The notes below the pieces were generated by a model that did no database searches, was not told the origin of the DNA, and saw only the letters and a program-made list of their open reading frames with translations. From Auanema rhodensis (Eukaryota > Animalia > Nematoda): a DNA stretch of 64,000 nt. Below are positions 1-64,000 of this stretch, one piece after another. The stretch spans positions 10,292,001-10,356,000 of the forward strand of contig OZ059897.1 of NCBI GenBank assembly GCA_964057225.1. The letters run 5' to 3'. The position numbers and the translations under genes were made by a program. Positions within the stretch are counted from its first letter, which is position 1, and every line of letters begins with the position of its first letter.

Positions 1-1
1 C

Positions 2-3892: not shown

Positions 3893-3936
3893 GCTCAAAA
3901 TTCACCTCAAGCAGAAAAACTCCCAGCACCACAAGA

Positions 3937-43144: not shown

Positions 43145-43157
43145 TGGAGGTTCCACC
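43145..43157 (+). other. Primer binding site, tRNA-Gln
   Basis: TGGAGGTTCCACC abutting the LTR with no spacer. Confidence 0.8.
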
Positions 43158-44354
43158 TTGCTTACTTTACTGTTAATTTATTGACAGCAAGTTTACGAGA
43201 CTTTTGGACTTAATTACCCAACAGTGAGGAGTAACCGAGCCGTGCACCATGATTTCCCCAAAAATTATTTTGGCTACCACTTCTCCTCCGCTCAACGAAA
43301 ACTGGGAGGTGTCTGAGACGTTTGGGGAAACTATCAGACAATAGTTTTGACGAGCGTTACCTTTTTGTTATGCACGCGCGTGCTATTTTGATTCATTACT
43401 TTATGATGTGAATGTCCAGTGTGGCAACAGAGCTCACTTTTTAGCTGAGTTGTTTGGAAGCTGGAGGCTGTTGGGATAATTTTATTTACGATTTTTTGAT
43501 TTTGATTCACATCCAAGGGTTCATCAGGATTCTACTCCTGTTAACTCTTTTCTTATTAGTTCAGAGATAATAAGAATATTTAAATTCCTACCCACCCAAG
43601 TCCACTCTACGTCTGCCAACGTTTCCTTTTTCCTATATTATTGACAGATTACTGAATTTAAATTCCTATATCAATCTTAAATTACCTTCTAAATCTTTTG
43701 AAATTAAATTAAAAATTATCTTAATTAAGATTTATTTTGAAATTCTTTCTACAAATCTTAATAAACTTTATAAAATTGAACTTAATATACGAGATGAGAC
43801 ATTTTTGTTTACTTTAAGCTTACTCACATTCAAATAGTTGGCCCACGCGTACCAGCTGTTCGATATGTGTAGTCAATAACAGCTGTTAAAATTCAAAAGT
43901 TTTCAAACAGGCTTAAGGCACCATCTGTGATTCCTTATTTGTCTCTAAGCTGACATAAGTGATTATAATATTCAAATATCACGACAGACGGTCAATGGTT
44001 GTTTACCATAAGCGCTAACATCTGGTGTCGTGACACATGGCTGGAGACGGAGCTTGAAGCTTCAACGATCCTCCTTCATCGGACGCCATTGTCACAAACG
44101 TTTTTACTGGAGTCTAGTTGCTTCCAGTACGCGCTTTTATATTCATCTAACTGTATTCACCAGCCACCCTGTCGGACTCGGACATCAGCGACGAAAACAA
44201 AGATCAGGAACAAGGATCACCAGAGGTACGCCAAGTTTTTGAATTTAATTCTAAAAACTTAAATACTCCATCCACCTACCTCTCTCCTTTTGAATTTTTG
44301 AGAGAAGAAGGTGATTCCTCTTCTTCTTCTCACTCTTCTTCTCTAACAATTAGA

Positions 44355-45638: not shown

Positions 45639-48214
45639 AGTCATGGGAAGCATGGAAATGCTATGTGAAAAAGTATAAAAGCTGTGTGAGAGATTTCATG
45701 TTTTTGAGAGATCGTAACACCACATTCTCTCATATTGAAACAGTAGATAAGAAAGATTGTGTTCGAGCACATAGAAATCGTATGTGGAATGATAAAATCA
45801 TGAATGCCCAACAGCATTCAGTTTTTGAAACACCATTAAACGAGCATAATCCAACTCGCTCTTGGTCCACCGAAGAATGTGTAGAAATTGAACAATTTGT
45901 ATTGAAGCGAGGGATAATAACTAGATTGAAAGAAGATCACATTGTATCAGACTTATTTATAAATACTGATAATTGTAAAGGAAATGAAGGGTTTTGTGCA
46001 ACTGGTGAAAGTGCAGTTATCTGGCAACCACCTATCCCATCAGTTGTCTGTCACTATCAAAAACTTGGCCCCTTCTCCGCCATGTTGGGTGATCATATTC
46101 TTCTAGTTCACTCTATTGAAAGCGCTTTTGTTCTCCAAAATCATTCCACATCCGCTCACGTTCAATCTTGTTTCGAATTCGCTGTTTTTGAATCATCCTC
46201 TGAGGCAATTATCCGATTCACAGCATATCCCCGTGTTTATAATTTGCTTGATCTTTCCAATACTTTGCTTAATGCTGATAGACGCAGAAATAAACGTAAT
46301 GCATTACCTCAAAAACAGCGCTCTTTCAGTGATGATTATCTTTTTGTTAATGCGAAATCCCAACCATATGCGTTTCCATTTCTAAGACCTACTTTCATTT
46401 TTGGATCTGCATCTATCACTAAGTTTTACGCAAAATATATGAGATATGCAGCTACATCATCTTATGAGAGTTTGCTCCAATTCGCGATAGATAATCCACT
46501 GTTCATTGACACAATTGTTAGTTTAGGATTGACAAAAGATCACATAACTAACTGGGCAAAGTCTAATAATTTCAAAGATCCCAATCTTTTGATTTTACAA
46601 TGTATGGGTATAGAGGAAATTAAACTGGCTACTAGACAGGTGATTAATAGCATGAAATTGGATGATCTTATCACTCAAGTAGCTCGTCGTATAGAAGTTC
46701 CTCGGTTAAAAAGATCGTTGATGAAATCTACAACATCCATAGAAGACTTCTTTCGAGGAATGGCTCACGCAGTAGTATATCAAGCCACAATTCTTGATGG
46801 TACACAAACAGTTCCATCAATCGAACAGTTGGCCAGAGCCTTATATCCATCTATATTAGCACGCAGTGGAAATATGAATCAATCTGAAATTATTGCAACT
46901 GCTCAAGGCATGTTATTCATGATCCAACAACAATCGGGAAAAGAACAAATATCTCGTGACATGCAAGTCAGTCGACAACAAAAAGCTGATGCTACTGTTA
47001 GAAACAACCAAGAGCAAGATTTAGCAATTATATCCAAGCTGCCTGACTATCACAACCTTTATACAAAGAATAGTACAGCATATTATGGATTTCCTCCACA
47101 GTCCATCGAATACCCACAGGAAAATCCTAAATTCAATAAAACAGAAGTTTTAGAATTCATAAGTTGGGTTAAAACTCAAATCACAACTGATAAAAATATG
47201 GTACAGCATACTACTGTAACCCCAATAACTGCCACCAAAACTACAATTCGTAGTTTAACAACTCCTACCCCTAATGCGTACGAGAGAGGTCGAGAGTTGT
47301 ATGTAGCAGAAGTATATGACAATGTTCTCCACAAATCAGAGCATAAAACTAAAACGATAATAGATAATAAGTTGAATTATGGGTTTGAGAAAGCGCGTCT
47401 CTCCATAATTGACGAATTTCATCAACAGTTTCATACCATCTGTAAATCTCAAATGGAAACTGTAAAAAGCTGGCAAGCTATATTACGTATACATCCTACA
47501 ATAGGAGTAAGAGCTATGCTTCAGCGGGATGATATCGTTGCCCGATTTGTTGGAAGAAATGTTTTAAAAATAACAACTTGTCAGGAAATAGAACCACATT
47601 TCATTTATCGTAATCATTCTTACAATGATAAATGTTATGCAGAGACCCCTGTTTTAACACACGATAAACAATTATTCTTTGCTCCTATCGATAGCTACGA
47701 TTTGAGCACTGAAGGACATGAGATCAATTGTGAACACAAAGAGACAGAGATTTGGTATGAAAATGGAACATGGAGAGATTATAAAGGTGACACACATAAA
47801 GTAGATAGTATTCATTCAGAAAAACATGATCATTATGCTGAATTGAGTAAACTTCGATTCACAGGGCGGAATTTGTTTGAAAATTCGACTGAAAAATCCT
47901 TAGCCCTATCTATTGGATTAACTTATGGTTATAGTTTATCTACTTCACCTCACCATGATCTTCTCCGCGTAATTTCTCGTTCACGTGATTGGCCTCAAAT
48001 TTCCTCTTTCATCTTCAAAGGAAGTAAACTTATAAGAGATGCCAGGAAAATTGTTTTCTCCAATTGGGATCTGTTCATTGACTTTTGTATAGGTTCAATT
48101 GAACGAACACTCATTACCATCGGTTGTATAACTCTGATATTATGTCTAATGATAGCATTATATTTCACTTTCAAGATAATTCTTTCCGGTTCGTTACTGA
48201 CTTTAGAGCATTGA
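45635..48214 (+). pseudogene. Envelope-like glycoprotein (gB/chuvirus class III-like) of element C
   Basis: Cys pattern shared with B and D; basic site RRRNKR; ICKSQ..W..IL.I.PT.G.R.ML.R.DI.ARF; CYAETPV; C-terminal TM. Lacks an in-frame start because of the upstream frameshift. Confidence 0.8.
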
Positions 48215-50624
48215 ATAGTGTTACTAAGAAACAAACATACAGCATCCCACACATTCCTGATATCATAGACTTAGCGGCTGGAGCTCAGTTCTTTTCGAAT
48301 TTTGATCTCATTTCTGGTTTCTTCCAAATACCGTTGAAACACTCAGATAGATACCTAACTGCTTTTACCACTCCATCAGGTACCTATCAGTATTGCCGAA
48401 TGCCTATGGGATTGTGTGGAGCGCCACACACTTTTCAATCCGCAGTACGATACTTGCAATCTCTTGTTAGATACAAACTGTTTGTATATCTAGATGATTT
48501 GCTAATAATTTCGAACTCAGCTGAAGAACATTTAAAAGATATACAAGAAGTGCTGAAAAAGCCACTGAAGTAAAGTTTTTGGGTTTTGTAATAGGTAGAA
48601 ATGGTGTTAAACCAGATCCTGCTAAAATACAGGCTGTTTCCGAATTTCCAAATCCAAGCACAGTTACGGCTGTCAGATCCTTTCTAGGTATGACTAACTA
48701 TTTTCGACGGTTTATTCAAAATTATGCCGGAATAGCTGAGCCATTGTATAAGTTAACACATAAGGATACTCCTTTTGAGTGGAAATCGGAACATGCAGAC
48801 GCATTTAAAACTTTAAAAACATTACTGTGTACTGCCCCTGTACTGAAACCTCCTAAAGCAGACCAACCTTTTGTTATAGAAAGTGATGGCAGTATGATCG
48901 CTGTGGGAGCAGTTTTATTGCAATCAGCAGAGAAAAATTCTCCATTACACCCGATTGCGTTCGCTAGTAGAAAGTTGACTCCAGCGGAACGGAAATATCC
49001 TCCTATTGAAGTTGAAGCACTCGGTTTAGTCTTTGCTCTTCAACAATTCCGTACCTATGTATTAGGAGTACCTACCACAGTTATCACAGATCACCGACCA
49101 TTAACCAGTTTAATGTCGCGTAAAGATCTCATAGGTAGATTAGCCAAGTATCAACTAATGACACAAGATTTCAACATAAAGATTGAATATCGTCCTGGCA
49201 AATTAAACAGTGTCTGTGATGCTCTCTCCAAGTATATAGAAAACGAAGCAAATGACAGTCGTCCTACTAAACCAAAGGACAAAGTAAAACCTGTTGATGC
49301 TTTTATTGCTCATATTACAACTATTTCTTCTATTGACCAACTAAATTGTGAAGAAATACGGAAAGTTCAAGCTGGAGTTCCCTGGATTCGCGAAGCACTT
49401 TCTCAAATTAATAATGATAACTGTCCGGCTAATATATCAGACCGGTATGAAGAACGAGAAGGCATATTACATGCAAAACAAGCGAAAAATTATTTAAAAC
49501 CATCTATTATTTTGCCTCGAAACGACAAAATAACTGATGTTGTTATCAAGTTTTTCCATGAAGATTCCAAAATTGGTGCACACCTAGGTATAAATAAAAC
49601 TACTGATGCGATTCGACGACGATTCTTTTGGACTAATATGGTTCCACAAATAACTGAATTTATTAATCGTTGTACAAAATGTGCAAGTAGGAAATCTAAC
49701 CCACACCAATCGTATATTCAACCTATGGGAAGATTTGTTATACCCGAAAAGCCATTTGATCGTATTCATGTAGATATACTAGGTCCTTTACCTCGCACTA
49801 ATGATGGACATCGATACATCTTGAGTATTCAAGACGCTTTTAGTAAATGGGGAACAACTTGCCCATTAATAACACAAACGGCTACTGAAATCACAAAAGC
49901 GTTTGTAATTAGATTTGTTTTCATATATGGACCACCAATGAGTATGATAACCGATAATGGTAGTAGCTTTTTGTCATCTGAATTTCAAGCTATGTGTAAA
50001 CAATTTGGAATTAAACACACTACTACGCTACCATATCATAAAAATGCTAATGGACAAGTTGAGAGACTTCATAGAACTTTGGAAGAAGCTCTCTCTTCAT
50101 TCGTGAATGAACAACAAACTAACTGGGATATACACCTACCCAAAGTTATGTTTGCGATCAATACGTTACCAAACTCATCAACATCTATTAGTCCATATGT
50201 TGTATTATTTGGTCGGGATGCAAGACTTCCTATTGACCATCAATTGCCTGGAAACAATCTTCAAACTGAAGAACCAGCCAATCCTACAGAAGATTTTGTC
50301 AATAGATCGCTAATACAAAATGAAAGCACATCTAATATAGTAAAAGATAGAATTGAAACATGCACAAAGAAGAATGAACAACGGTACAATACACGAAATA
50401 GAACACAAAATAAAGAAATTCAGGTTGATGACTTAGTTATGATAAAAGTGAATTCTACTCGAAACAAACTAACACCTTCATTCGAAGGGCCTTATTTAGT
50501 TACAGCACTTCAAAGATCTTTCGTCGTGGTTCAAACAGATAAAGGAAAAAGCAGAAGAGTACACAAGGACTTCGTCAAACCTTACCAACGGACCACATCT
50601 ATTCCGGTTATCACAATTTCTTGA
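48173..50624 (+). pseudogene. Pol remnant of element C: RT fragment, RNase H, integrase; protease and RT N-terminus deleted
   Basis: RFVTDFRALN...YLDD (48173-48573); small deletion/frameshift ~48555; then TEVKFLG, ESDGS, HHCC, DDE core, GPY to stop at 50624. Confidence 0.92.
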
Positions 50625-51191
50625 AGGTAGTTTTTTTTTTTAACTAAATCAAACTGTTGAAATTTTTTTTTATTTTGTGCCATTTCTGATTGTAACACTT
50701 CTTTGTTGTTGATTGATTTTCTCTGAAAAGTCTGCTATTGTTTTACAAGGTTTTGTTTTATTACTCCAACTCTCATTGAGTAGATTTTTCAACATTCTCT
50801 TGTGAATCTTGCTATTTTTTTATGCATAATCATTACTTGTATTCACCTTATGGACATTAGTCATACGGGTTAAACGAGTTTTCATTTTTTTGTACAGAAC
50901 GGGCTCGACCTATTCTCAGGGTAACACCGTACCTGTACAACTCGAGAAAATGAACGACTATATCACAGTCGAATGGTTTAGAAGCAAAGCTCTCGTTTGC
51001 AAGTGAATGGAATAGAATCTACTCGATACTACATTTCGAATTCAACAAACTTGAAGAGACAATAGCTAAACTTTCAAATCGTATTGTATACATTTTTTTA
51101 TCCACTACACCATGATTTTTTTTCCAACATCCAACTATCTTAAAAATTGAATTAATTTATTTTGTTTTTGAACGAGGACGTTCAACTTTTT

Positions 51192-51203
51192 AAGGTGGGG
51201 GGA
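51192..51203 (+). other. Polypurine tract of element C
   Basis: AAGGTGGGGGGA directly before the 3' LTR. Confidence 0.85.
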
Positions 51204-51585
51204 TGTCACATCTGCAAGCACATGGTAAACATGTGCGCGCTATTCAAATAGCGGGAGCCTGAACAAGCCCCGCCCACAACATGGGACACACATGGCACTC
51301 TTGCTTCTGGCCTAACCCAGATAGGTTGTCTTATAGCCATGTGAGTCTCATCTCTATATCATCTATATATATACTCTATTTAATACTTTATTATATCTCT
51401 TTATATTCTTTCTTAATGTAATTCTTATATTGTATTTTCTTGTTATCTGATAATGAATCCTTTTCTCTTTGAGTATTTGTCTTAATAAGGAAATCGGGGC
51501 GTTCGGGTCTGCCTACCTAAGGAACAAGGTAGAAGTACATATATCTTCCGACCATGAAAAGAACGGGAAGAAACAATATGTAACG
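51204..51585 (+). repeat. 3' LTR of element C
   Basis: Identical by eye to 42763-43144. Confidence 0.95.
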
Positions 51586-53156
51586 CATCCTTCAATTTCT
51601 GGTCATTGAATTAGAATTTTCATGTTGTCACACAGGAAATGAAGAATCTTAGTTCAATTCAGTAACACTGAACACACTAACTTTGTTAAGTTGTTGTAAT
51701 ATCGGCCCAAGTAGTATAGTGGTTAGTACTCCACGTTGTGGCCGTGGCGACACAGGTTCGATTCCTGTCTTGGGCATTTTTTGTTTTGAAATTTAAATGC
51801 TATGAAATTATTGCTTGCTTGTCATGTTAGATTTGTTTAATTTAAATACTTATTTAAGTTCCAACAATTTTCGATTAAATCACGTTCAATTAACTGTATT
51901 GTTTTTAAAAATAAAGACAAAATTCAATTTCTGGTCATTGAATTAGAATTTTCATGTTGTCACACAGAAATTGAAGAATCTTAGTTCATTTCAGTAACAA
52001 TGAACACACTAACTTTGTTAAGTTGTTGTAATATCGGCCCAAGTAGTATAGTGGTTAGTACTCCACGTTGTGGCCGTGGCGACACAGGTTCGATTCCTGT
52101 CTTGGGCATTTTTTGTTTTGAAATTTAAATGCTATAAAATTATTGCTTGCTTGTCATGTTAGATTTGTTTAATTCAAATACTTATTTAAGTTCTAACAAT
52201 TTCTGATTTAATCACGTTCAATTAACTGTATTGTTTTCAAAAATAAAGACAAAATTCAATTTCTGTTCATTGAATTAGAATTTTTATGTTGTCACACAGG
52301 AAATGAAGAATCTTAGTTCATTTCAGTAACAATGAACACACTAATTTTGTTAAGTTGTTGTAATATCGGCTCAAGTAGTATAGTGGTTAGTACTCCACGT
52401 TGTGGCCGTGGCGACACAGGTTCGATTCCTGTCTTGGGCAATTTTTGTTTTGAAATTAAAATGCTATAAAATTATTGCTTGCTTGTCATGTTAGATTTGT
52501 TTAATTTAAATACTTATTAAAGTTCCAACAATTTTCGATTAAATCACATTCAATTAACTGTATTGTTTTCAAAAATAAAGACAAAATTCAATTTCTGTTC
52601 ATTGAATTAGAATTTTTATGTTGTCACACAGGAAATGAAGAATCTTAGTTCATTTCAGTAACAATGAACACAATAATTTTGTATAGTTTGTAATACCGGC
52701 CCAAGTAGTATAGTGGTTAGTACTCCACGTTGTGGCCGTGGCGACACAGGTTCGATTCCTGTCTTGGGCATTTTTTGTTTTGAAATTAAAAAGCTATAAA
52801 CATATTGCTTGCTTGTCATGTTAGATTTGTTTAATTTAAATACTTATTTAAGTTCTAACAATTTTTGATTTAATCACGTTCAATTAACTGTATTGTTTTC
52901 AAAAATAAAGACATCCTTCAATTTCTGGTCATTGAATTAGAATTTTCATGTTGTCACACAGGAAATGAAGAATCTTAGTTCATTTCAGTAACAATGAACA
53001 CACTATTTTTGTTAAGTTGTTGTAATATCGGCCCAAGTAGTATAGTGGTTAGTACTCCACGTTGTGGCCGTGGCGACACAGGTTCGATTCCTGTCTTGGG
53101 CATTTTTTGTTTTGAAATTTAAATGCTATAAAATTATTGCTTGCTTGTCATGTTAG
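51586..53156 (+). repeat. tRNA-His tandem array segment 3: 5 tRNA copies
   Basis: tRNA +1 at 51705, 52037, 52369, 52699, 53031. Confidence 0.96.
53031..53102 (+). tRNA. trnH-GUG: tRNA-His(GUG), last copy in window
   Basis: Same 72-nt cloverleaf and T6 terminator. Confidence 0.95.
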
Positions 53157-53573
53157 CGTTCCATTTAGATTCTCAATGGTTCCAAGTTGAGAGATCCAAA
53201 CAGACTATGAGAAGATGAGTATGATTTTAAATATATGTGTGTAATGTAAGGTGAAATAAGAAACAAGAGATGAAATATATAAAGGTTTATTGTTCGCATT
53301 ATAATATAATTATACAAAGATTAAAGCTAGAGTTAAGAAAGAGAATATAAAGAAGATAAAGAGAAAGTAAGATAATGAGATAATGAGATGCCTGAGTCTT
53401 GAGGACTCAGGTTTATATATCCATACAACTCCTACTCAGTTTACACAAATTGTTACAAAGCTTATAAAAAGTGCATCTAGAATATTCTCAGAATTGCTTA
53501 AAAACTATCTGCATTAGTTTAATAATAGCAGCTGCCATGGTCAGCTGCTTTCCTTTGAGATATGTATGTAACA
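53157..53573 (-). repeat. 3' LTR of element D (417 bp, TG...CG)
   Basis: Minus strand TGTTACAT...ATGGAACG; TATATAAA ~53412-53419; AATAAA ~53286-53291; preceded by TTGGGGCA and the conserved hairpin. Confidence 0.8.
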
Positions 53574-53773: not shown

Positions 53774-54418
53774 TTAATCCGCCAGTTGGTCAATTTCCTG
53801 GATCATTTCCGTCATTGATGCTAGTCCAAGCAGCTCCATTGTTCTGATGGTTTGGCTAACTGCTTTTGCCTTACTTTTTGATGCGGACGTGTTGGTAGTC
53901 CTTTTTGTCAGTAGTTTTTCGATTACTACTGATAGGTCTTGCCCTATCTCTATCCACGATGCCTCTTCTTCGGTTCCGCTATTTCCTACAGCTTGTTGTG
54001 TCATCTGTGTTGTCCACGTCGGCATTGCTTTGTAGATGTCAGCTGTGGTCTGCGTTCTGGCGGGTTGTCCCAGCATTATGTGTCGGATTCTGTTCTCTTT
54101 CTGGCTGAGAGAACATCCTTCTGTCCATTTCTTTTGATGCTGGCGAAGCTCCTTCAGATCGTTTTCCTTATAGTTTTTGGTTTTCTCCTCCAATAGTTCC
54201 ATCATAAATAGGATGTGCTGTGTCTTCTTTTCCAATTTGCTCGTTTGGAGGCTTATTATTGGTCCTAAGTTGGGCTTCATGCAGTTGATAGGTAGAAGAC
54301 CTTCACGAAGGTTTTCTACCTCTATCCATTCTTGTTCAATAGTGGTCGCTAGAGGGACCAGTGGTGTTGGAGTTGCGAGGAATGTAGAGAGTGTGACGTT
54401 GGCGAGAGAGGAGGTCAT
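53774..54418 (-). CDS. Accessory ORF2 of element D, ~214 aa, homolog of 3937-4572
   Basis: Same position and orientation as in element A, alignable motifs. ATG at 54418 (the track start 54457 is TTG). Confidence 0.75.
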   Translation of the reverse strand: MTSSLANVTLSTFLATPTPLVPLATTIEQEWIEVENLREGLLPINCMKPNLGPIISLQTSKLEKKTQHILFMMELLEEKTKNYKENDLKELRQHQKKWTEGCSLSQKENRIRHIMLGQPARTQTTADIYKAMPTWTTQMTQQAVGNSGTEEEASWIEIGQDLSVVIEKLLTKRTTNTSASKSKAKAVSQTIRTMELLGLASMTEMIQEIDQLAD

Positions 54419-54621: not shown

Positions 54622-56289
54622 TTAAAAGTTTCGTACTTGTTCTCCTTTGTTTTGCGATGGAGATTTATTCTGCTGCTTTTTGCTTTGATCCGCTTTTCCA
54701 TGTAGTTCCAATTCTCCATTACTTCTGATTTCTTCGTCTTGTGTTTTTCTTTTGGGTTGTAGTTTAACATGATACGGGCGTGAGTTTTCATTTCCTATTC
54801 CTAGTGCTGCGGCAAGTGTAGTGTTCCAATTTTTGATTGCTGGTGAGTTTTTGTTTCTGTCCTCAAATAGCTCCTTTCTGTTTTCATTCTTGAATTGATC
54901 TCGTAGCTTTTCGTATGTTTTTGCGTTATTATCTTCTATATCGTTTTGATTAGGACCTTCTTCTTGAGAGAAAGGTGTCAGCTGTCTGAGGTCCTCTTGA
55001 ATTCTGTCGATTGTTGTTGATTCATTTTCTAATTGTATATTAGAATTTGTTATTCTTCTTGCTGTAGCAAGGTCGTCAGGTGTTTCTGAATTATGTTCAA
55101 TTTCTTCTTCGTTTACTCCTCTGTTATTCCCTGTGATAGGTAACAGTTGCGCGAGAGTATCTGGACTGCCTGTTGTGTAACAGTTGTTGTTATTTTCCGT
55201 ATTATTGGTTTGTTCCCATTCATCCAGATTATTCCAACTTGTTTCTTCTTCTTCTTCTTCTTCGTTTGCTATGTCTTGGTCCTCTTCTTCCTCTTCTTCA
55301 TTATTTCTTGTTGATATAAGATTATCGTCTGGTGGAAAATAACGTATGTTATTTTTGTGAGCTTTTATAATATTTCCCTCTTGGTCCGTTATGCTGATGT
55401 TGTTTCCTTCAATTGTCACTATCCGGTAAGGTCCATCTCTTCGTATTTGTAATTTGTTGCTTGGGTTCGCTCTTTGTACAAATACTCGATCTCCTATATC
55501 CAATATTCTTTCTTTTGTCCTATGTGCTTGATCGTATTTCTGCTTCATTCTTTCTTCATTGGTGGCAATCTTTTCCTTGACTTTTTCTTGAATATCTCTT
55601 AAGTTTTTGAGCTGATCCGTGATATTTTGTTCTTCCGGTGTTTCCAAGTTTTTGTCAATGGGTAGACGTGCTACTTGTCCAAACAAACATTCGTATGGTG
55701 ATGTTTTAGTGGTGGCGTTTGGTAATCTGTTGAGTGTAAAAATAATCTTCGGAAGTATCTTATCCCAATCGTTTTGTTCGTCATTAACGTAGGCTGTTAA
55801 TGCTTCTTCGATCGTCCGATGTAATCTTTCTACTTGTCCGTTAGCGTTTTTGTAATACGGCATAGTAGTGTGGTGTGTAGTTCCAAAATTACTGCACATA
55901 GTAGTGAAATCGTTTGAAATAAAATTAGATCCATTGTCTGTGATGATAGTAACAGGTGGTCCAAAAACATAAAAGAGATATTTTTCGATAGCTGATATAA
56001 TTTCTTCTGATGTTTGTCTGATTAGCGGAATTGCGATTATCCATTTTGAAAAAGAATCTTGAATTGAAAGAACATATCTGTTTTCTTGTTCTGTCCTAGG
56101 TAATGGTCCGAGTATATCCATGTGTACTCTTTGCCATGGTTTTGTTGATGTTGGAAAATTTTTCATTGGTTCCACCGTTGCTTCGTGAGGATTGTTCTTT
56201 CTTTTTGCACAAGCAAGACATCTGTTGATGTAGTTTGTAATGTCTTCTTGCATTCCAGTCCATGTAAATCGTCTTGATATTGAGTCCAT
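54622..56289 (-). CDS. Integrase core, GPY motif and acidic tail of element D (continuation of polyprotein after a 1-nt frameshift)
   Basis: C..C, MDILGP, ITDNG, NGQVERLH, GPY; colinear with the element A integrase. Confidence 0.9.
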   Translation of the reverse strand: MDSISRRFTWTGMQEDITNYINRCLACAKRKNNPHEATVEPMKNFPTSTKPWQRVHMDILGPLPRTEQENRYVLSIQDSFSKWIIAIPLIRQTSEEIISAIEKYLFYVFGPPVTIITDNGSNFISNDFTTMCSNFGTTHHTTMPYYKNANGQVERLHRTIEEALTAYVNDEQNDWDKILPKIIFTLNRLPNATTKTSPYECLFGQVARLPIDKNLETPEEQNITDQLKNLRDIQEKVKEKIATNEERMKQKYDQAHRTKERILDIGDRVFVQRANPSNKLQIRRDGPYRIVTIEGNNISITDQEGNIIKAHKNNIRYFPPDDNLISTRNNEEEEEEDQDIANEEEEEEETSWNNLDEWEQTNNTENNNNCYTTGSPDTLAQLLPITGNNRGVNEEEIEHNSETPDDLATARRITNSNIQLENESTTIDRIQEDLRQLTPFSQEEGPNQNDIEDNNAKTYEKLRDQFKNENRKELFEDRNKNSPAIKNWNTTLAAALGIGNENSRPYHVKLQPKRKTQDEEIRSNGELELHGKADQSKKQQNKSPSQNKGEQVRNF

Positions 56290-59200
56290 TGTTTTGTTAT
56301 TCCTAGATGAGCTCCGAGTGTCGGATCTTCATGAAATTTCTTCATAATTGGATTAATTATGTGCTCTTCTCGTGGTAAAATTGTTCGTGGTACTTGTAGG
56401 GTTCTTTTTGGTTTTGAGTATAGTACATCGTTGTACACAATATATCTGTCCGTCAGTTGTCGTCCAGCTGTATTATTCTTTATTTTATCCATAGTTTCTT
56501 TTATCCAATTTGATTGATTCTGCACTGATCGAATATCTGCTATCGTGAAGGTGTTTATCTGATGAATAGTATCTTCCGTCGTTTTTCTTTCGTTTTTCTT
56601 CTTTGCTGGTGGTTTTGCTTCGTTGATTTCATCTTCAAAATATCGTGATAATGCGTCACATACACTATTTAATTTTCCTGGTCTGTAGATAATTTCAATA
56701 TCGTATTCTTGTAAAACAATTTGAAATTTTGCTAAACGACCTATTAAATCTTTTCTAGTCATTAAACTAGTAAGTGGTCTATGATCCGTGATAATTTTGG
56801 TTGCTGTTCCTAGTATGTAGGTGCGAAATTGTTTAACGGCGAATGTAAGAGCTAATGCTTCTACTTCTATTGGTGGATAATTCCTTTCAGCTTTGTTGAG
56901 TTTCCGACTAGCAAAAGCTATGGGGTGTAATGGTTCTTGATCGTCTTTCGCTTGAAGTAGTACAGCGCCAACTGCTATCATACTTCCATCACTTTCAATA
57001 ACATATGGTCGTTTCGGGATTGGTGCTTGTAACACAGGTGCTTGAGTCAATGTTTTCTTCAAAGTATTAAAAGCAATTTCTTCTTCTTCTGTCCATTTGA
57101 ACGGAGTGTCTTTCCGAGTGAGGTTGTAGAGTGGTGTTGCTATTCCTGCAGCGTTCTTTATGAACCTTCTGAAGTAGTTTACTACTCCCATGAAAGCTCT
57201 TACTCCTGTTGTTGATTTTGGTTGGGGATAATCTTGTATTGCCTTAATTTTATGTGGGTCCGGTTTAATTCCTTCTTGTCCAACTATGTATCCTAGAAAT
57301 TTTACTTCCTTTCTTGCGAATGCGCATTTCTTCAGTTTTATTTTGAATCCTATTTGAGTTACTGCTTCCAAGACTTCTTCAATATCTTTTAAATGTGCTG
57401 TCGTAGATTCAGAGATTAACAGTAAATCATCTAGATATACGAATAGCTTGCATTTAACCATTGATTGCAGGTATCGTACTGCGTTTTGAAAAGTATGGGG
57501 TGATCCACATAATCCCATCGGCATTCGACAATATTGATAAGTTCCACTTGTTGTTGTGAAAGCTGTAAGATGACGATCTTCTTTCTTAAGAGGTATTTGG
57601 AAAAATCCAGATACTAAATCAAAGTTGCTGAAGATCCTTGCTCCAGCGGCCAAATCTAGGATGTCCTGTATGTTTGATATGACATATACTTGTTTCTGAG
57701 TGATTGCATTCAGAGCTCGAAAGTCCGTTACAAATCTGTAAGTTTTGTCTTTCTTCTTCACCAAAATTACTGGACTAGTTGTCATTGAGTTTGATGGTTC
57801 AATGATTCTTTGTTGTAGCATTTCTTCTATTTGTTTCTCCACTTCTTCTTGTTGGGAGAGTGGTATACGATAAGTAATTTTGAATGATGGTGTTTTTCCT
57901 GGCATGATTGGAATGGAGTGTTCAATTGGTCCTAGGAAGAGTCCGATATTTCTATCTTCGTTGAGAAACGCTTGTTTATGTAGTAAAATTATTTCTTTCA
58001 GTTGCTGTTGTTCGATTTGCGAGAAGCAGGCTTCTGAGAGGTCAAGCTCATTGATGAAATTGTCTGGGAAATATGGCAGTTGTTCTTCCCATCGAGCTTC
58101 TGGAGGTATGTATTGTCCTTCGTATTTTTCTTGGTTGTCCTTTGGTATCGCTTCTGCTATCCCTATTTCTTGATTCATTTGAATTTCGAGTGGCTGTTTG
58201 CATATGTTCGTCGCGTAAATTTGTACTCCGTATCCAGTTGGCGTAAATATAGTAGGCGTGAAAGAGAGTTTGTTGCCTGGTTTCTTACAATCTAGAAACG
58301 CCTGTTCATAGCTTTCTGGATCGTGTACTTCTAGCGTGAGCGTTCTTGTTTCTCCTGGTCTTAGCGTTTTGTTTTCTAAGCTAACCACATATGCTTTCGT
58401 GGTCTGGTGTTCCCACGGAGATGTTTCTCGTGCTAGTGGAACATGTGTTGTGCCGATAACAATTGTTTTATCCAGCGGTCGAAGTGAGGTGTAAATTCCT
58501 TGTTGATGTAATGCTTCCATGAAGTCTATTCCAAGTAACACTGGTGCTGGACAGTAGTTATCTTCTGCTACATAAAATTTGTGTTCTGTTTCTGTTGTTC
58601 CTATTGTTATGAGGATCCTTGTGTATCCCATAAATGAGAATTTAGATTTATTCGCGACTATCGCTGTTGTTTGTTTTAGTACCATCGTTGCAGCGGGCAG
58701 TTGTTTGAAGGTGGATTCTCGCATGTATGATGCTGATGCTCCCGTGTCCCATAGTGCCTTAAAGATGTGATTGTGGATTGAAATTGGGACAAACGGTAAT
58801 TGTGATCCTCCTATGTAGTTTATGTTTTCTTTCTTCATGCTTGTAGGGAAATAAGCTTCATAAATGTGTTCAGGAATTGGTGCTGAAGGATCATACAATG
58901 TGAGTTGACAGCTGTTGTGATGGTTGTCGACGTATGGAGCGGACGGAGAAGGATGAGATGTTTCTGTTCTTGTGTTCTCAGTTGATAGTGGTTGTAAGTA
59001 TTCTGCTTCCCATTTGACATTGTTGATGGGTATCCTTGAACTACATGCGTATATTTTTATTATCCAGGTGGCGAGTGTGATTATGCCAATTGTTATGATG
59101 ATTGATCCAATGATAGCAAGTACGCGTAGTGTCCAGGTTTGAATCTTTTCCCATATTGGTGACAGAAAGTCAAACATTTTCCAGGTTATAGCTTCTTTTG

Positions 59201-62200
59201 TATGTTCGTAGCTGAGTAGTAAGCTGCTGGCTGCTCCTGCTGTTAGGGTAACAGGGTTCATGTTAGGAATTAATCTTTGTTTGATTACAGGTTTTATTCT
59301 TCCTGGTAAAGTAGCTTGTAGCGTTGCTAAGCTGGATCCATATGATATTGCTAGTGCCATAGGAAACGTTGATTCTGTTAGATTGTTGAAAATGTTGCTT
59401 CCATTAAACTTGATATGTTCTAGGTTGATTGATCCTAACTCGTCGATGTATGCTGGTGATGTTACATTTATTGATTGGTTATTATTAGTCCATTGATCGT
59501 TTTCTTTCCAGGGATCCTTGATTGTGAATCCGCATGGTATGGCATGTGCCATCGGTGTGAGGTCTCTTGTACCTGGTAGGATGAACAGTTGGCCGTGATG
59601 TTCCGTTTCGACTGGGGTTTCCAGAAAACACGTGCTGTTGACTTTGTGATCACGGTATGTTTTTGTAATTTGAATTGGTGTGCATGGCATTACATAAATT
59701 AGTTTATCATTTATGAATCTTGCAGATATATCCTGTCGTCGTAGCATTGTACGCATCCCTATAGTAGGATTTATTTGAAGAATAGCCCACCAGGTAAGTA
59801 GTTGTTTATTTTGTACGTGGCAGATGTTGTTTCTGTTTGTTGTGAACGTACGTATGATATCATCTTCCAGATTGGTAGTGGCATATTGTAGATGAGATTG
59901 CGTTTCTTGTTGATGAAGATGTTCATTCCATTTTTGGACGATATCGTTCTTAGCTTTAAGGTAGTCTACGTGAGCTTTCTTACCAATATGTGATGATATT
60001 TCTTCAGGTGTGCTGCGAGTGGTAGTGATAGATCTTTTTGTAGTTCTTGGAGGCGGTGACTTGGTGAGTGATTCTTTCCTATTGTATTCCTGGCTTGAGG
60101 TGATTGTGATTGGGTTTGTAGTAATATTGAATGTAGATTGGGGGGTGGAGAATGATTGTGTTGGTCGATGAGTGGTGAATATAGTTGTGGTTGTTGTAGG
60201 TGTTGTGGTTGTTGTTGATCTGAGTCTAGCAGTAGTAGAAGTAGTAGTAGTAGTAGTGGTAGTAGTAGTAGTAGTTGATGAAGACGTGGGTATTGTTGGT
60301 TTGGGTCTAGTTGTTGTGGATATATGTGTTTTGGGTGTGATTGTTGAAGTGATGACGTTCCTTATGGTTGTAGGCTTAGGGGTCGTGGTAGTGGTTGTAG
60401 TAGTAGTTTGTAGGGGGGTCGAAGTGCTTCTAATTGTGGTTGCAAAAGGTCGTGTTCCGGGAGTACTGATAAGGGGTAGATAATGATTATAAAATTTTTC
60501 ACTATCCTCTTGTGTAATGCTATAATTTGTAGGATTTCTTTTCCGGAAGCCGTAGAATATATCGTCGCCATCGAAGATAACTGTGTAGTTTGGCAGTTGT
60601 AATGGTGGTAAGTTCAGTTCTTTTTCATATTTGATCCATTTCTTCATTTCTGCTTCGTATTCTTCTTTTGAATGTAGCTTCTTCGGATTATTTATTGCGT
60701 TCAGGATAATTTTTGCTTGTGCTAGTTGTTCGTACAGTTCTAAATCGTTTCGTGTCTTGGTGAGTCTTGGTTTTCTTGGTGGCATGAGTTGATATAAGTA
60801 TTCTTCTAAAGATGGTGTTGTTTCTCCTGTAGCTAACGTAGTAGGTATTTCCGCAAGTGAGTAAGCAATTTCTTTCGCGATTTCATAGTAGTCTCCTGTT
60901 TTGGTTGGTAGTATCTTCTTAAAATCCTTAATTGTGATCCGTTTGCTAAGTTTATGCGTAAGTTCCTTATACGATAGATTATCGATCGCGATTTTTGTTG
61001 CTTCTCTTATTTCTGCTTCTCCTAGGGCGTGTAGAATGGCTATGTTGACGTCTTCATATTTGTGCCATATAAGACGATTTTTGATAACATCAAAATTTAT
61101 ACCTAGGTATTTGAAGATTGCGATATACTTAGGTAACATATTTGTTATGTTATTGAGATTGTAATGGATGTCAAGTCTTTTCCGTTGAATATAGGTTGTA
61201 TATAGTAGAATAGTTCCGGTTTTGCTGGCTGAATATCTTAGCGAGGGGTATTGATGAACTGTCAAGAATCCTTTAGGGTATTCCGTGATTGCGTGTCTTC
61301 TTGATCGTCCTAAGCTTGAGGTTGAGTTGAAGGAGATTAGAGTTCCACTATTTGTAGTAAATATATCTTTTTGTAAGCATGAGGAGGCTTCTTTTTCCGG
61401 TGTTTTATTGTTTAGAATAAAAGCACTTTGAATTCCGGGAATCAATATGGTGTCTTCTGATATAAAAACTTCGTGAGAGCCTAATGAAGTGTACGAGCAA
61501 CTATGTTTTTCTGATGGTGGGGTCCATATGATGAGAGCGTTGTTGGTTAGGCATTGTCCTTTGTCACTGGTGCATCCGTTGTCGTTTATGAATATATCTG
61601 AGAGTACTGTATTGTCTTGTAGGCTGGTCATGTGTCCTCGTTCAGCTATGAATCTGGTACGTTGTTCGCATTCCTGTTTCCATATACCATTAGTAATGGT
61701 TGTCTCTGGGAATGGAGTTCCATAGAGTCCTGGTGCTTCTCTTTGAAGGTTGGTACCGTTGAATATTCTTTCTTTAATAGCTGACGAACATTCTTGCAGT
61801 GTTGTTGGTGAAACTTTTGCTAGTGAGACATTAGTTTCTCTGATGAAGAAAACGTCGTGAATGCAGAGTTGGTAAGTTTCAATTGCACATTTCCATGCTT
61901 CCCATTCTTTTGGTTGTAGGTTTTGGATGAACAATTCTGCTGTTGTCTTCTGGATATGGTTATTAGTTGGTGCGATGGATCGGCAAGCTGTTGGAGATGG
62001 CGGCTCGACATATATTCCTCCTCTGTTTCCTGTGCATAACTGGTACGTTGTTTCTGCACTGCATGTGTTTATAATGAGTGCGATAATTGTGATAAAGAGG
62101 GGTAGGAATGGTGTTGATTTTCTTTTGTTGTTCGGTACTTCGTTTTCCGTGACGTTGTTGACTTGAAAACGTACTCCTGGGCTCTGTGTGCGTTCTCTAT

Positions 62201-63821
62201 ACCGTTCCGGTCCATTGGAGGTGCTGCGCGGGCGACTTCTATAATTGTTGTATTGGCTTCGATTGTATTGAGAGGGGTATTGTTCGTGATTATTTGATTG
62301 TCGCCGGTTGTTGTGTCCGCTATAGTTTTGGTCGCGGTTTCGATAGTATGGTCTTTCTTGGCTTCTGTTCCGTGATCTGTCGAAGTAGTTTTGTCTTGAT
62401 CCCTTATTTTGAGAGAATCGTGAGTTATGGTTCCTGTATTGGTGTTGATGAGGCCGATATTGGTTGTTGTATCTGTCCGGATATCGGTTGTGTGGTTTGC
62501 CATTGCCATTATACATCGGTTTGGTTCCTTTGAATTCCTTAGATTCGTTTCTCTGGTATTGATTGTTGTCCTTTGAGTCTCGAATGTTGAGGTTGTTGAA
62601 CGACTTCTCCATATTGTTGACGAACGATGGTGGTCTATTTTGTATAAAGAGTTCTTCTCGTAAGGCCATTTCGTAAGCTTCCTCAAAGTTTGGTGGGTCT
62701 AGACGGCTAACGTGTTCGCTTATTTCGGGTCTTAGTCCCCAGGTGAAGGTGGATCGGAGCATGTTAAGCTCACTTTCGTTGTTCATGTCCATAGCCGAGT
62801 AGGCTTCGTTAGAACATCTTGTTGCAAAGCTTTGTACCGATTCCGTTGGTAACTGTTTCAAGCCATGTAGGCGGTGCATTGCTCGTTCTCTCTGTTTTTT
62901 CGGTGTGATCATTTCTGAGAGTCGCTTCTTGACATGGTCCCATCCGAGTCGCTTATCTTCGGTTGTGAGTTTTCTGTACGCTTCTCTTGCTCGATCATCT
63001 TCTAGCAATAATTGTATGCTTTGAAGACGTTCGGGCATAGTTGTTCTTGTAGCGTTGAAGTGTTCATCTAGGTATAGTAGATAGCGGTTGAATGGTGTTT
63101 TTCCATCGTAGCGTGGAGCTTTTATATCGCGTATGGCGGACGGAATCGCTGCTGGTTGAGGGATGATTGTAGGTGTTGGAACAGGTGCCCTTCCCGAGGT
63201 TTGCGTAAGTGGTGCGCCTTCGTCCATTGGGTCCATTCTTGGGTTAATTCTCTTGTTTTCTGCAACAAAAGTATTTGCTTGATTAGTTTGCGATGGAAGA
63301 GACGGAGATAGAGAATGCCCGGATGTAGAATGATCAATGGATGAAGGTGAGTTTCGTAGAGGTGGGGATGAGCTTACTGCGGGTGTGGTTGAAGAAAGTG
63401 CGGGCGTAGGTGATTTTTGTGTGGTTGGTGTATTGCTTCTTCTAGGGGTGGCTATTAAAGGATTGATTGGGTTGATTGTATTTGGTATGGTGTTGGTTGG
63501 GGGGTTTTGAGGGTTCCCTTTGCTTGCTATGTTTTTAGGAATAGGTTTAATGTTTGGGATAATTTTCTTTTCTAAGGTGTTTCTTTCGACTATGTCTGTT
63601 TTTTGTTTCTTCGTTTTTTCATGTGATTTGGGATTGGTGAATTGTTTTTGAATGCCGCGATGTCTTGGGGTATGTATTACCATTGACTTTGTTTTAATGC
63701 TTAACTTCGCTTGTTTTGCAGAGGGGGGAGAATATGTTGCGGGCGGTTGTCTTTTTCTTCTTATAATATTTGAAGTGGCAGCAGGGTCCAGCGGAGGTTT
63801 TGGACCAGTATTGGGCAGCAT
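56290..63821 (-). CDS. Gag-Env-PR-RT-RNaseH-IN(N-term) polyprotein of element D
   Basis: Single frame: P/S/T-rich N-terminus, capsid-like PRYDG..F..GLRPEI, N/Q/R/Y-rich region, signal peptide (~62055-62110), Cys-rich ectodomain with RSRR and Thr-rich region, TM (~59045-59136), ALWDTGAS protease (~58745), YLDD RT, RNase H, HLG. First ATG is 63821. Confidence 0.93.
59040..62110 (-). other. Envelope-like type I glycoprotein embedded between Gag and protease (~1020 aa)
   Basis: Signal peptide, conserved Cys, several N-x-S/T sequons, furin-type site, mucin-like tract, ICHVQN..INPT.G.R..L.R.DI.ARF, CFLETPV..LPGT..IPC, TM anchor. Confidence 0.8.
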
Positions 63822-64000
63822 CGTTGGTATCCTGTAAGGAAATTTGTTATATCCAACGTGTGCCAAAATAATTTTATATATAGAAAAACGTAAAGAATAA
63901 TGTTGGGTTTGTGTGCGCGATTCTTATGAAGGTAGCTAGTCTTGCAAGTAATCTCTTTACCAATATAGCTCGTCCGGGTCTAACACAGGTTTGAAACTAG

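What the first reader, a model, noticed from the sequence alone, without database searches (positions are those of the whole stretch)
56290..63821. Gypsy elements with Env inside the polyprotein, between Gag and protease (gag-env-pro-RT-RH-IN in one frame)
Seen: element D has one reading frame running Gag, hydrophobic signal, ~1000-aa Cys-rich glycoprotein, TM, DTG protease, RT, RNase H, IN. Elements B and C, which have different LTRs and diverged proteins, show the same Gag-signal-YQ[IL]C junction and Cys pattern, and C shows the TM followed by pol. Known: retroviruses, insect errantiviruses and BEL elements place env after pol. The C..Q...NPT...R..L.R.DI.AR...C and C[YF]..PV....F..P.....C motifs resemble class III (herpes gB / chuvirus G) envelopes captured by retroelements such as Ascaris Tas. 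Inference: the polyprotein is threaded through the ER like an alpha/flavivirus structural polyprotein (Gag cytosolic, Env luminal, Pol cytosolic and membrane-tethered until cleaved). That gives 1:1:1 stoichiometry with no frameshift or env splice, i.e. a candidate infectious endogenous virus lineage. I cannot exclude that this layout has already been reported in nematodes.
Basis: partly seen in the sequence, partly recalled or inferred. Interest (0 to 1): 0.92.

Follow-up and report, generated by a model that had tools for sequence, protein, structure and literature searches.

The report
Nematode gypsy retrovirus, envelope before pol
The window holds copies of a nematode endogenous retrovirus family whose viral fusion glycoprotein is encoded in frame between gag and protease-pol; the layout is real and conserved, but it was published in 2022 and again in 2023/2026, so these are new members of a known kind.

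Summary
On the minus strand, element D has one uninterrupted reading frame covering Gag, an internal signal-like segment, a ~970-aa ectodomain, one transmembrane helix, DTG protease, RT, RNase H and the start of integrase. The integrase core lies in another frame (one frameshift), so "IN in frame" is not correct.

Elements B and C, at 25-35% identity in gag and env, show the same gag-signal-env junction in frame.

The envelope is a class III fusogen:
- Its C-terminal part passes the Pfam cut-off for PF24664 Monjiviricetes_fusion.
- A family profile hits solved herpesvirus gB structures at E 8e-18.
- An AlphaFold model hits gB and nyavirus, chu-like and rhabdo-like glycoproteins in Foldseek.

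The layout is common in nematodes. 24 of the 28 nearest pol relatives carry the env domain in the same protein, and the pattern of two hydrophobic segments is conserved.

The layout is not new. Chary & Hayashi (eLife 2026; bioRxiv 2023) describe GAG-ENV-POL gB-type elements in Nematoda and credit Sacco et al. 2022 (J Gen Virol) with the first report.

Lineage-specific extras are an orphan helical domain plus a mucin-like run inside the ectodomain, P[TS]AP motifs in the Env tail, and a small ORF after pol.

The parts
54622..63866 (-). Element D: the gag-env-pro-pol coding region taken as one gene. It is stop-free from gag through RNase H into the start of IN. It is broken once, by a frameshift within integrase.
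62118..63866 (-). D Gag part (aa 1-583). It has a P/S/T-rich N-terminus and a capsid-like domain (PF03732, aa 290-379 = 62730-62999). A basic N/R/Q/Y-rich tail follows, with no CCHC knuckle (one Cys in the whole part).
62049..62117 (-). D internal signal-like hydrophobic segment (aa 584-606). Small residues sit at -3/-1 just before the conserved YQLC motif.
59145..62048 (-). D Env ectodomain (aa 607-1574), with 14 Cys and 13 N-x-S/T sequons. The AlphaFold model shows a beta-rich N part, a helical insert, a disordered mucin-like run, then a long central helix and a beta crown.
61329..62048 (-). Beta-rich N-terminal part of the ectodomain (aa 607-846; 10 Cys; model pLDDT mostly 80-97).
60618..61214 (-). 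All-helical insert (about aa 885-1083). It lies just downstream of a polybasic R-x-R-R motif. It has no fold match in the PDB and matches only Auanema proteins by sequence.
59997..60476 (-). Thr/Pro-rich mucin-like run (about aa 1131-1290; S+T+P 52-58%; model pLDDT about 30).
59448..59903 (-). Core of the class III fusogen (aa 1322-1473). PF24664 Monjiviricetes_fusion scores 46.9 bits against a cut-off of 27. PF00606 herpes gB scores 27 bits, below its cut-off of 43. The region contains the C[YF]..PV motif and the two Cys that are invariant in the 47-sequence alignment A1.
59040..59144 (-). D transmembrane (stop-transfer) segment, aa 1575-1609.
58800..59039 (-). Cytoplasmic tail and linker between the TM and protease (aa 1610-1689). 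It carries two PSAP motifs.
58506..58799 (-). Aspartyl protease (DTG), aa 1690-1787.
57282..57761 (-). Reverse transcriptase (RVT_1), aa 2036-2195.
56703..57095 (-). RNase H (RT_RNaseH / RT_RNaseH_2), aa 2258-2388.
54622..56354 (-). Integrase (H2C2 zinc-binding domain, rve core, long C-terminal extension). Broken by one frameshift.
53774..54418 (-). Small accessory ORF (214 aa from its ATG) between pol and the 3' LTR. It has no Pfam hit. It is weakly similar to the ORF in the same position in element A.
53151..53573 (-). D 3' LTR (about 423 bp, TGT...ACA), abutting the tRNA-His array. The 5' LTR is beyond the window end.
42763..51585 (+). Element C, a second lineage with the same gag-signal-env-TM-pol order. 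Its 382-bp LTRs (42763-43144 and 51204-51585) are 100% identical and the target-site duplication is CATC. The coding region (44298-50624) has two frameshifts and one deletion that removes the protease and the N-terminal part of RT.
5105..7555 (-). Element B, a third lineage. Gag, the signal-like segment, YQIC and the first ~250 aa of the env ectodomain sit in one frame. It is cut off where element A begins.
1..4572 (+). Element A, cut by the window start. It has RT-RH-IN in one ORF, with RT and RH 86-87% identical to D, followed by a 241-aa accessory ORF (3847-4572).

Best explanation
Element D, with B, C and probably A, is a copy of the nematode Ty3/gypsy endogenous retrovirus group that carries a class III fusion glycoprotein in frame between gag and pro-pol. 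This is the group reported by Sacco et al. 2022 and called GAG-ENV-POL HSV/gB-type errantiviruses by Chary & Hayashi.

Shown here:
- the domain order and reading-frame continuity;
- the class III nature of the env;
- conservation of the layout, and of exactly one signal-like and one stop-transfer segment flanking the ectodomain.

Inferred mechanism:
1. The genomic RNA is translated as one polyprotein.
2. Gag emerges in the cytosol.
3. The internal signal segment targets the ribosome to the ER, and the ectodomain is translocated and glycosylated.
4. The TM helix stops transfer, so protease-RT-RNase H-IN are made on the cytosolic side, tethered to the membrane.
5. Signal peptidase cuts at the small -3/-1 residues before YQ[IL]C. 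A furin-like protease may cut at the polybasic motif after the beta-rich N part.
6. The element's own protease releases Pol, and probably trims Gag off its signal anchor.
7. P[TS]AP motifs in the Env tail of this sub-lineage suggest ESCRT-assisted budding.

Copy D cannot supply integrase as it stands. Copy C is defective despite identical LTRs.

The confidence of 0.85 is for identity and layout. For the inferred polyprotein-threading mechanism alone I would give about 0.6.
For: Layout and frame.

Same junction in B and C.

Full gag-signal-env-TM-PR-RT-RH-IN in single proteins elsewhere:
- P0002;
- Caenorhabditis auriculariae P0155, C. remanei P0158 and Meloidogyne hapla P0184.

Distribution:
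- An exhaustive search with C's env found 234 representative proteins at E<=1e-3.
- Of the 151 sequences held, 52 have env followed by PR/RT/RH/IN and 13 have gag in front.
- 24 of the 28 best pol relatives covering >=90% of the query carry PF24664 and/or PF00606. All the named ones are nematodes.

Topology:
- In 48 env-pol fusion proteins there is almost always one hydrophobic segment between env and PR/RT, and never one inside env. Where the N-terminal part is present there is usually one before env.
- 20 of 21 proteins with the anchor motif have a hydrophobic stretch directly upstream. 18 have a -3/-1 small-residue arrangement, and 17 have more than 300 residues in front.

Class III identity:
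- PF24664 scores 46.9 bits, above its cut-off of 27.
- 42 of 47 family members match PF24664.
- A family profile hits solved gB structures at E 8e-18, and rhabdovirus-type glycoprotein chains at E about 3e-4.
- Foldseek probability is 1.00 against gB (E 2e-10). It is also 1.00 against rhabdo-like, nyavirus and chu-related glycoproteins (best E 2.7e-16).

Polybasic motif: R-x-[KR]-R is 7.5-fold enriched in the linker after the N part and present in 47 of 94 proteins.

Literature: PMC13524379.
Against: - No RNA or protein data exist for these elements, so translation as a single chain, the cleavage sites and the ER topology are all inferred.
- No dedicated signal-peptide or TM predictor was available. 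I used hydropathy and the -3/-1 rule only.
- Foldseek TM-scores are low (0.15-0.25). The model's domains are not arranged as in the solved trimers, so fold similarity is at domain level.
- The Sacco et al. paper could not be read here.
- D has a broken integrase and its 5' LTR is not in the window.
- The host species was not identified. The nearest relative is from Auanema, at 63% identity in pol.
Confidence: 0.85

Rival explanations
1. The open frame is real, but the polyprotein is not the main product. Cis- or trans-splicing yields a Gag-Pol message without env and/or a separate env message. Stoichiometry would then be set at RNA level, as in retroviruses.
For: - Nothing in the sequence analysis excludes it, and nematodes splice and trans-splice extensively.
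- Many database env proteins stand alone (41 with both env parts only and 36 with only the C-terminal env part). Many of these come from short contigs or from gene models.
- Chary & Hayashi had to allow gaps between ENV and POL when searching.
Against: - Frame continuity gag->env->pro is kept in lineages only 25-35% identical. That is unnecessary if env were removed or expressed separately.
- The signal segment lies at the exact gag/env boundary, with no ATG-initiated env start required.
- Single-ORF Gag-Pol-Env polyproteins are documented for nematode Atlas viruses (PMC9094657).
Confidence: 0.2
2. The env segment in D is a one-off artefact, for example a nested insertion, a recombinant or an assembly chimera, and not a family feature.
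For: The region is repeat-rich, with nested elements (A within B) and a long tRNA array. That makes misassembly conceivable.
Against: - Three diverged elements in the window share the order.
- Dozens of independent proteins from at least 12 nematode species share it too.
- The layout is published.
Confidence: 0.02
3. The copies in this window are inert relics. The long open frame reflects young age, not present function.
For: - D has a frameshift in integrase.
- C has two frameshifts and lacks the protease and part of RT.
- B is truncated by A.
Against: - At family level the frame and the Cys/topology pattern are kept across deep divergence, which argues for selection on the coding capacity.
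- C's LTRs are 100% identical with an intact 4-bp duplication. Something therefore mobilised a defective genome recently, which implies functional copies elsewhere in the genome.
Confidence: 0.3
4. The glycoprotein is a host gene domesticated from a virus, a cellular fusogen that merely lies beside retroelement sequences.
For: Viral fusogens have been domesticated in other animals (general knowledge).
Against: - It is in frame with gag and pol inside LTR-bounded units, present in several copies and lineages, and embedded in a repeat array.
- There is no separate promoter or start.
Confidence: 0.02

Closest known systems
Nematode endogenous retroviruses with env between gag and pro-pol (Sacco, Lau, Godinez-Vidal & Kaloshian 2022, J Gen Virol 103:1739). 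These are the GAG-ENV-POL HSV/gB-type 'errantiviruses' of Nematoda in Chary & Hayashi, eLife 2026 (PMC13524379).
   Same: - Ty3/gypsy-type pol.
- Class III (gB / Monjiviricetes-type) env placed between gag and pol.
- Nematode relatives.
- Ectodomain flanked by a signal and a TM.
- From my own recollection of the 2022 abstract (not verifiable here): one continuous gag-env-pro-pol ORF, and an extra small ORF or a Upf1-like helicase ORF. One env-family protein held here does carry AAA_11/AAA_12 helicase domains.
   Different: - The elements here are only 47-63% identical to the nearest database relative (Auanema sp. JU1783).
- Between the beta-rich N part and the central helix they carry 370-450 aa, against a family median of 79 aa. 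This stretch is an orphan helical domain plus, in D, a ~160-aa mucin-like run (C has only a short Thr-rich stretch).
- I could not check whether that insert or the P[TS]AP tail motifs were described.
Ascaris Tas and other BEL/Pao elements with a gB-like env after pol
   Same: The env family is the same. Eleven of the 151 env-family sequences held place it after IN, and five of these also match a BEL-type RT.
   Different: D, B and C have a Ty3/gypsy-type pol with no similarity to the BEL element in the same window. Their env lies before pol, not after.
Atlas virus / Cer13-type nematode belpaoviruses (PMC9094657)
   Same: Nematode endogenous viruses translated as one Gag-Pol-Env polyprotein with a captured RNA-virus fusogen. 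An Atlas-like element sits in this very window (15680-24027).
   Different: Atlas has a BEL/Pao pol and a class II (phlebovirus Gc) env at the C-terminus. Pol therefore does not have to be made downstream of a membrane-spanning segment.
Insect errantiviruses (gypsy, ZAM, Idefix)
   Same: Ty3/gypsy backbone plus an acquired envelope gene.
   Different: The order is gag-pol-env, env comes from a spliced subgenomic RNA, and in Drosophila it is an F-type (class I-like) env.
Flavivirus / alphavirus structural polyproteins (functional analogy only)
   Same: A basic nucleic-acid-binding capsid part is followed directly by an internal signal sequence. The downstream glycoprotein is translocated, and a TM segment returns the chain to the cytosolic side.
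   Different: They are unrelated in sequence, are RNA viruses, and have class II fusogens. The analogy is inferred, not tested.

Membership tests
Ty3/gypsy (Metaviridae) LTR retroelement | pol order PR-RT-RNase H-IN with Ty3/gypsy-type domains | tested here: met
   Pfam finds gag-asp_proteas, RVT_1, RT_RNaseH_2/RT_RNaseH, Integrase_H2C2 and rve in that order. There is no similarity to the BEL/Pao pol in the window.
Ty3/gypsy (Metaviridae) LTR retroelement | Two LTRs and a target-site duplication | tested here: inconclusive
   Met for C: 382-bp LTRs 100% identical and a CATC duplication. For D only the 3' LTR (53151-53573) is inside the window.
Nematode GAG-ENV-POL gB-type elements (Sacco 2022; Chary & Hayashi 2026) | env located between gag and pro-pol | tested here: met
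   for D; for B and C.
Nematode GAG-ENV-POL gB-type elements (Sacco 2022; Chary & Hayashi 2026) | env of the HSV gB / Monjiviricetes class III type | tested here: met
   PF24664 scores 46.9 bits against a cut-off of 27. The family profile hits solved gB at E 8e-18.
Nematode GAG-ENV-POL gB-type elements (Sacco 2022; Chary & Hayashi 2026) | pol groups with the other nematode elements of this layout | tested here: inconclusive
   24 of the 28 nearest pol relatives are env-bearing, and all the named ones are nematode proteins. No formal phylogeny against the published sets was made.
Nematode GAG-ENV-POL gB-type elements (Sacco 2022; Chary & Hayashi 2026) | Nematode host | tested here: inconclusive
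   The host of the window was not identified (one search found nothing). All named close relatives are nematodes: Auanema, Caenorhabditis, Diploscapter, Meloidogyne, Acrobeloides, Aphelenchoides and Oesophagostomum.
Class III viral fusion glycoprotein | Fold: beta-rich fusion/PH-type domains, long central helix, beta crown, single C-terminal TM | tested here: met
   The AlphaFold model has strands in residues 1-240, a 69-residue helix at 691-759, a beta domain at 774-855 and a TM helix. Foldseek probability is 1.00 against gB and Monjiviricetes glycoproteins. TM-scores are low (0.15-0.25), so the match is at domain level.
Class III viral fusion glycoprotein | Hydrophobic fusion loops and trimeric assembly | not tested
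   Only a monomer model was made, and the loops were not mapped.
Herpesvirus glycoprotein B (Pfam PF00606) | Score above the Pfam gathering cut-off (43 bits) | tested here: not met
   D and C score 22-27 bits. They are related at superfamily level, not members of the herpesvirus family model.
Monjiviricetes fusion glycoprotein (Pfam PF24664) | Score above the Pfam gathering cut-off (27 bits) | tested here: met
   D's env C part scores 46.9 bits, and 42 of 47 family members match. C's env ORF did not reach the reporting threshold for this model. Only profile positions ~311-456 of 653 are matched.
BEL/Pao (Belpaoviridae), Tas-like | Pao-type peptidase A17 and BEL-type RT/IN | tested here: not met
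   There are no Peptidase_A17 or DUF5641 hits in D, A or C. The BEL element at 15680-24027 has both.
Insect errantivirus | gag-pol-env order with env as the third ORF | tested here: not met
   env precedes pol.

The most novel reading that the evidence does not exclude
The whole Gag-Env-Pol chain is made as one ER-threaded polyprotein, leaving both Gag (through its C-terminal signal anchor) and Pol (through the Env TM) tethered to the same membrane. In this Auanema-related sub-lineage, the short Env tail upstream of protease, with its P[TS]AP motifs, would do the job of a retroviral p6 late domain. The lineage-specific helical and mucin-like modules in the ectodomain would add a receptor-binding or shielding function. 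None of this has been shown for any element of the group, as far as the literature I could read goes.
Probability: 0.35. Interest if true: 0.55.

Novelty: new member of a known kind. Interest (0 to 1): 0.3.

Why it matters
The layout is an unusual solution to expressing an envelope protein from a retroelement. It needs no splice and no frameshift, and puts a membrane protein in the middle of Gag-Pol.

It also records capture of an RNA-virus-type class III fusogen by a Ty3/gypsy element. That is already in the literature, so this window adds members rather than a concept.

Two things are still open, and these sequences help to frame them:
- How the polyprotein is actually processed and where particles assemble.
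- What the lineage-specific ectodomain modules and the tail motifs do.

The window is also a compact natural comparison. It holds several gypsy elements with a class III env and one BEL/Pao lineage with a class II env, all in one tRNA-His array and some with identical LTRs.

Tried and rejected
- **First homologue search.** Searching the whole env region was swamped by words from the Thr-rich run and returned only two hits. I replaced it with an exhaustive search using C's env ORF and a pol-region search.
- **Single-sequence search against solved structures.** It found nothing. Only the family profile did.
- **Pfam on the whole polyprotein.** It missed PF24664. The hit appeared only when the env C part was scanned alone.
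- **N-terminal 524 aa of the ectodomain.** No Pfam hit at E<=1.
- **Helical insert.** I modelled it alone (pLDDT 76, pTM 0.73). It has no PDB fold match (best E 2.1).
- **LTR comparison.** D's 3' LTR region has no nucleotide similarity to A/B, to C or to the last 300 bases of the window.
- **Host identification.** Exact look-up of the BEL ORF failed.
- **Sacco et al. 2022.** The paper is not held, and no other held paper quotes its title.
- **eLife supplements.** Not held.
- **tRNA targeting by the gypsy elements.** Rejected. Their ends lie 48 to about 145 bp from the nearest tRNA at no fixed position, and the array fills about half the window anyway.
- **PPxY and YPxL late-domain motifs.** At most one or two occurrences among the 48 tails.

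2. The script built an unused throw-away variable that joined two stretches of each relative's protein with XXXX. It was never used, printed or saved.

Full report
**1. What is there**

The finding lies on the minus strand. The ORF listing gives one 2567-codon stop-free frame there.

Its translation and Pfam scan give the following order:

| Feature | Residues |
|---|---|
| Retrotrans_gag capsid-like domain | 290-379 |
| Weak herpes gB ectodomain hit | 1323-1401 |
| Aspartyl protease with DTG | 1690-1787 |
| RVT_1 | 2036-2195 |
| RT_RNaseH_2 / RT_RNaseH | 2258-2388 |
| Start of the integrase zinc-binding domain | after RNase H |

- The integrase core and the rest of IN are in a different frame. 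Comparison with element A's pol gives two pieces in two frames, which means one frameshift.
- A Kyte-Doolittle scan finds exactly two strongly hydrophobic segments in the whole chain. One is aa 584-606, ending just before YQLC. The other is aa 1575-1609.
- Between them lie 14 Cys (10 in the first ~230 residues), 13 N-x-S/T sequons and a ~160-aa Thr/Pro-rich run.
- The Gag part has one Cys, so it has no CCHC knuckle. It ends in a basic N/R/Q/Y-rich stretch that abuts the signal-like segment.
- Downstream of pol lies a 214-aa ORF without Pfam hits, then a ~423-bp LTR (TGT...ACA) that abuts the tRNA array.
- The 5' LTR lies beyond the window end.

**2. The other copies in the window**

tblastn with D's domains gave these identities:

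| Element | Position and strand | Similarity to D |
|---|---|---|
| B | 5105-7555, minus | gag 28%, N part of env 35%, all in one frame; ends where element A begins |
| C | 42763-51585, plus | gag 27%, env 25-33%, RT/RH 66-68%; no protease |
| A | window start to ~4600, plus | RT/RH 86-87% |

- B and C both read Gag, then a hydrophobic segment, then YQIC in a single frame.
- C's env-bearing ORF ends in a TM helix.
- C has 382-bp LTRs that are 100% identical and a CATC target duplication. Yet its coding region has two frameshifts and a deletion of the protease and the N-terminal part of RT.
The only error is that IN is not wholly in frame in D.

**3. What the insert is**

- Scanned alone, D's env C part matches PF24664 Monjiviricetes_fusion ("viral fusion glycoprotein") at 46.9 bits, above the curated cut-off of 27. 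It matches PF00606 herpes gB at 27 bits, below that model's cut-off of 43.
- Of 47 aligned family members, 42 match PF24664 and 28 match PF00606 at E<=1e-3.
- A profile of that alignment hits solved herpesvirus gB chains, best 7kdd_A at E 8e-18. It hits rhabdovirus-type "Glycoprotein" chains more weakly, at E about 3e-4.
- An AlphaFold2 model of D's aa 607-1650 has mean pLDDT 67 and is confident outside the disordered runs. It shows:
  - a beta-rich N part;
  - an all-helical module;
  - the disordered mucin-like run;
  - a 69-residue central helix followed by a beta domain;
  - the TM helix.
- Foldseek puts herpesvirus gB first in the PDB (E 2e-10, probability 1.00).
- In BFVD, Foldseek puts glycoproteins of rhabdo-like, nya-, chu-related and herpes viruses first (best E 2.7e-16).
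- TM-scores are low (0.15-0.25), so the similarity is at domain level.
By Pfam the closest family model is the Monjiviricetes one, not herpes gB.

**4. Is the layout a family trait?**

- An exhaustive phmmer search with C's env ORF found 234 representative proteins at E<=1e-3, of which 103 were at <=1e-10.
- I placed D's and the BEL element's domains on the 151 sequences held:
  - 52 have env followed by PR/RT/RH/IN in the same protein, with a gypsy-type RT where RT is present;
  - 13 have gag in front of env;
  - 11 have env after IN, five of them also matching a BEL-type RT (the Tas-like order).
- Searching with D's PR-RT-RH region, 24 of the 28 best hits that cover >=90% of the query carry PF24664 and/or PF00606.
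- The named species among these are Auanema sp. JU1783, Caenorhabditis auriculariae, C. nigoni, C. brenneri, C. remanei, C. japonica, Diploscapter pachys, Aphelenchoides avenae, Meloidogyne enterolobii, M. hapla, Acrobeloides nanus and Oesophagostomum dentatum.
- Pfam scans of three of them show gag, fusion glycoprotein, PR, RT, RH and IN in that order in one protein. P0002 shows the same order by eye.

**5. Topology and processing (inference)**

- In 48 env-pol fusion proteins there is almost always one hydrophobic segment between env and PR/RT, and never one inside env. Where the N-terminal part is present there is usually one before env.
- Of 21 proteins with the conserved C-x(4-6)-GG anchor motif:
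  - 20 have a strongly hydrophobic stretch in the 35 residues upstream;
  - 18 have small residues in a -3/-1 arrangement;
  - in 17 the segment is internal, with more than 300 residues in front.
- A polybasic R-x-[KR]-R motif is 7.5-fold enriched in the linker after the beta-rich N part and is present in 47 of 94 proteins. D and C each have one.
- These points fit a polyprotein cut by signal peptidase, possibly by a furin-like enzyme, and by the element's protease. None of it has been observed.
- Single-chain Gag-Pol-Env expression has a precedent in nematode Atlas viruses (PMC9094657).

**6. Comparison with what is known**

- Chary & Hayashi (eLife 2026, PMC13524379; bioRxiv October 2023) state that errantiviruses of Nematoda, Bryozoa and Platyhelminthes carry only HSV/gB-type ENV, with ORFs arranged GAG-ENV-POL.
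- They also state that Sacco et al. [quoted passage not shown] It is not held here.
- From my own recollection of its abstract, it reports a continuous gag-env-pro-pol ORF, env resembling Nyamiviridae/Chuviridae glycoproteins, restriction to Chromadoria, and extra ORFs (a small protein or a Upf1-like helicase). This is unverified.
- That recollection agrees with three results here: the PF24664 and nyavirus hits, the small ORF after pol, and one family member with AAA_11/AAA_12 helicase domains.
- The eLife text does not contain the words polyprotein or frameshift. I could not find the processing model discussed there.
- Verdict: the finding rediscovers a published layout, and the elements here are new members.

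**7. What may be particular to these copies**

- The stretch between the beta-rich N part and the central helix is 450 aa in D and 369 aa in C, against a family median of 79 aa.
- It holds a ~200-aa helical module plus, in D, a long mucin-like run (C has only a short Thr-rich stretch):
  - it is confidently modelled;
  - it has no PDB fold match;
  - it matches only Auanema proteins by sequence.
- P[TS]AP occurs in the ~60-aa tail between TM and PR in D, P0001 and seven further relatives of the 48 (a second copy in D's tail is seen). That is far above chance for such short stretches, and it suggests a late-domain role.
- The post-pol ORFs of D and A are weakly alike (25% identity, E 1e-3 pairwise), although the RT and RNase H regions of A and D are 86-87% identical.

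**8. Limits**

- There is no expression data.
- No dedicated signal/TM predictor was available.
- No formal phylogeny was made.
- The host is not identified.
- D's 5' end is outside the window.

Noticed in passing
window 15680-24027 (+): This is a BEL/Pao element with 442-bp LTRs that are 100% identical. It has one 2405-aa ORF (16385-23602) running gag, Pao peptidase, RT, IN and DUF5641, then Phlebovirus_G2 with its C-terminal domain. That makes it an Atlas-virus / Cer13-like Gag-Pol-Env polyprotein with a class II fusogen. No break was seen in the ORF.
   Followed up: partly
window 15675-15679 and 24028-24032: The BEL/Pao element's 5-bp target duplication (CGGCC) covers the base before and the first four bases of a tRNA-His gene. 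The element therefore sits exactly at the 5' end of a Pol III gene, a Ty3-like position. This is a single event, so no claim of targeting can be made.
   Followed up: partly
window 9299-15679, 24028-42767, 51591-53156: There is a tandem array of a 332/330-bp unit, each unit with a tRNA-His(GTG) gene. At least 79 copies lie in the window at ~95% identity, interrupted by LTR elements of at least four lineages. The gypsy elements' ends lie at no fixed distance from the tRNAs.
   Followed up: partly
window 42763-51585: Element C has 100% identical LTRs and an intact 4-bp duplication, but a defective interior (two frameshifts, protease and part of RT deleted). This suggests a recent copy of an already defective genome made with proteins supplied by another copy, or else an assembly effect.
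   Followed up: partly
window 58800-59039 (-): There are two PSAP motifs in D's Env cytoplasmic tail upstream of the protease. P[TS]AP recurs in the same short tail in 8 of the other 47 env-pol fusion proteins compared, including the Auanema relative. It resembles a late domain.
   Followed up: partly
window 60618-61214 (-) and 59997-60476 (-): D's ectodomain holds an extra ~200-aa all-helical module and a ~160-aa Thr/Pro-rich run. Most family members lack both. The helical module has no fold match in the PDB.
   Followed up: yes
window 53774-54418 (-) and 3847-4572 (+): Small ORFs (214 and 241 aa) lie between pol and the 3' LTR in D and A. They have no Pfam hits and are 25% identical to each other, far more diverged than the neighbouring pol.
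   Followed up: partly
window 1-7555: This is a nested arrangement. Element A (plus strand) appears to have inserted into the env of element B (minus strand), and the rest of B would lie beyond the window start.
   Followed up: no
window 54622-55850 (-): The integrases of D and A have ~380-400 residues after the rve core, a long C-terminal extension without Pfam hits.
   Followed up: no
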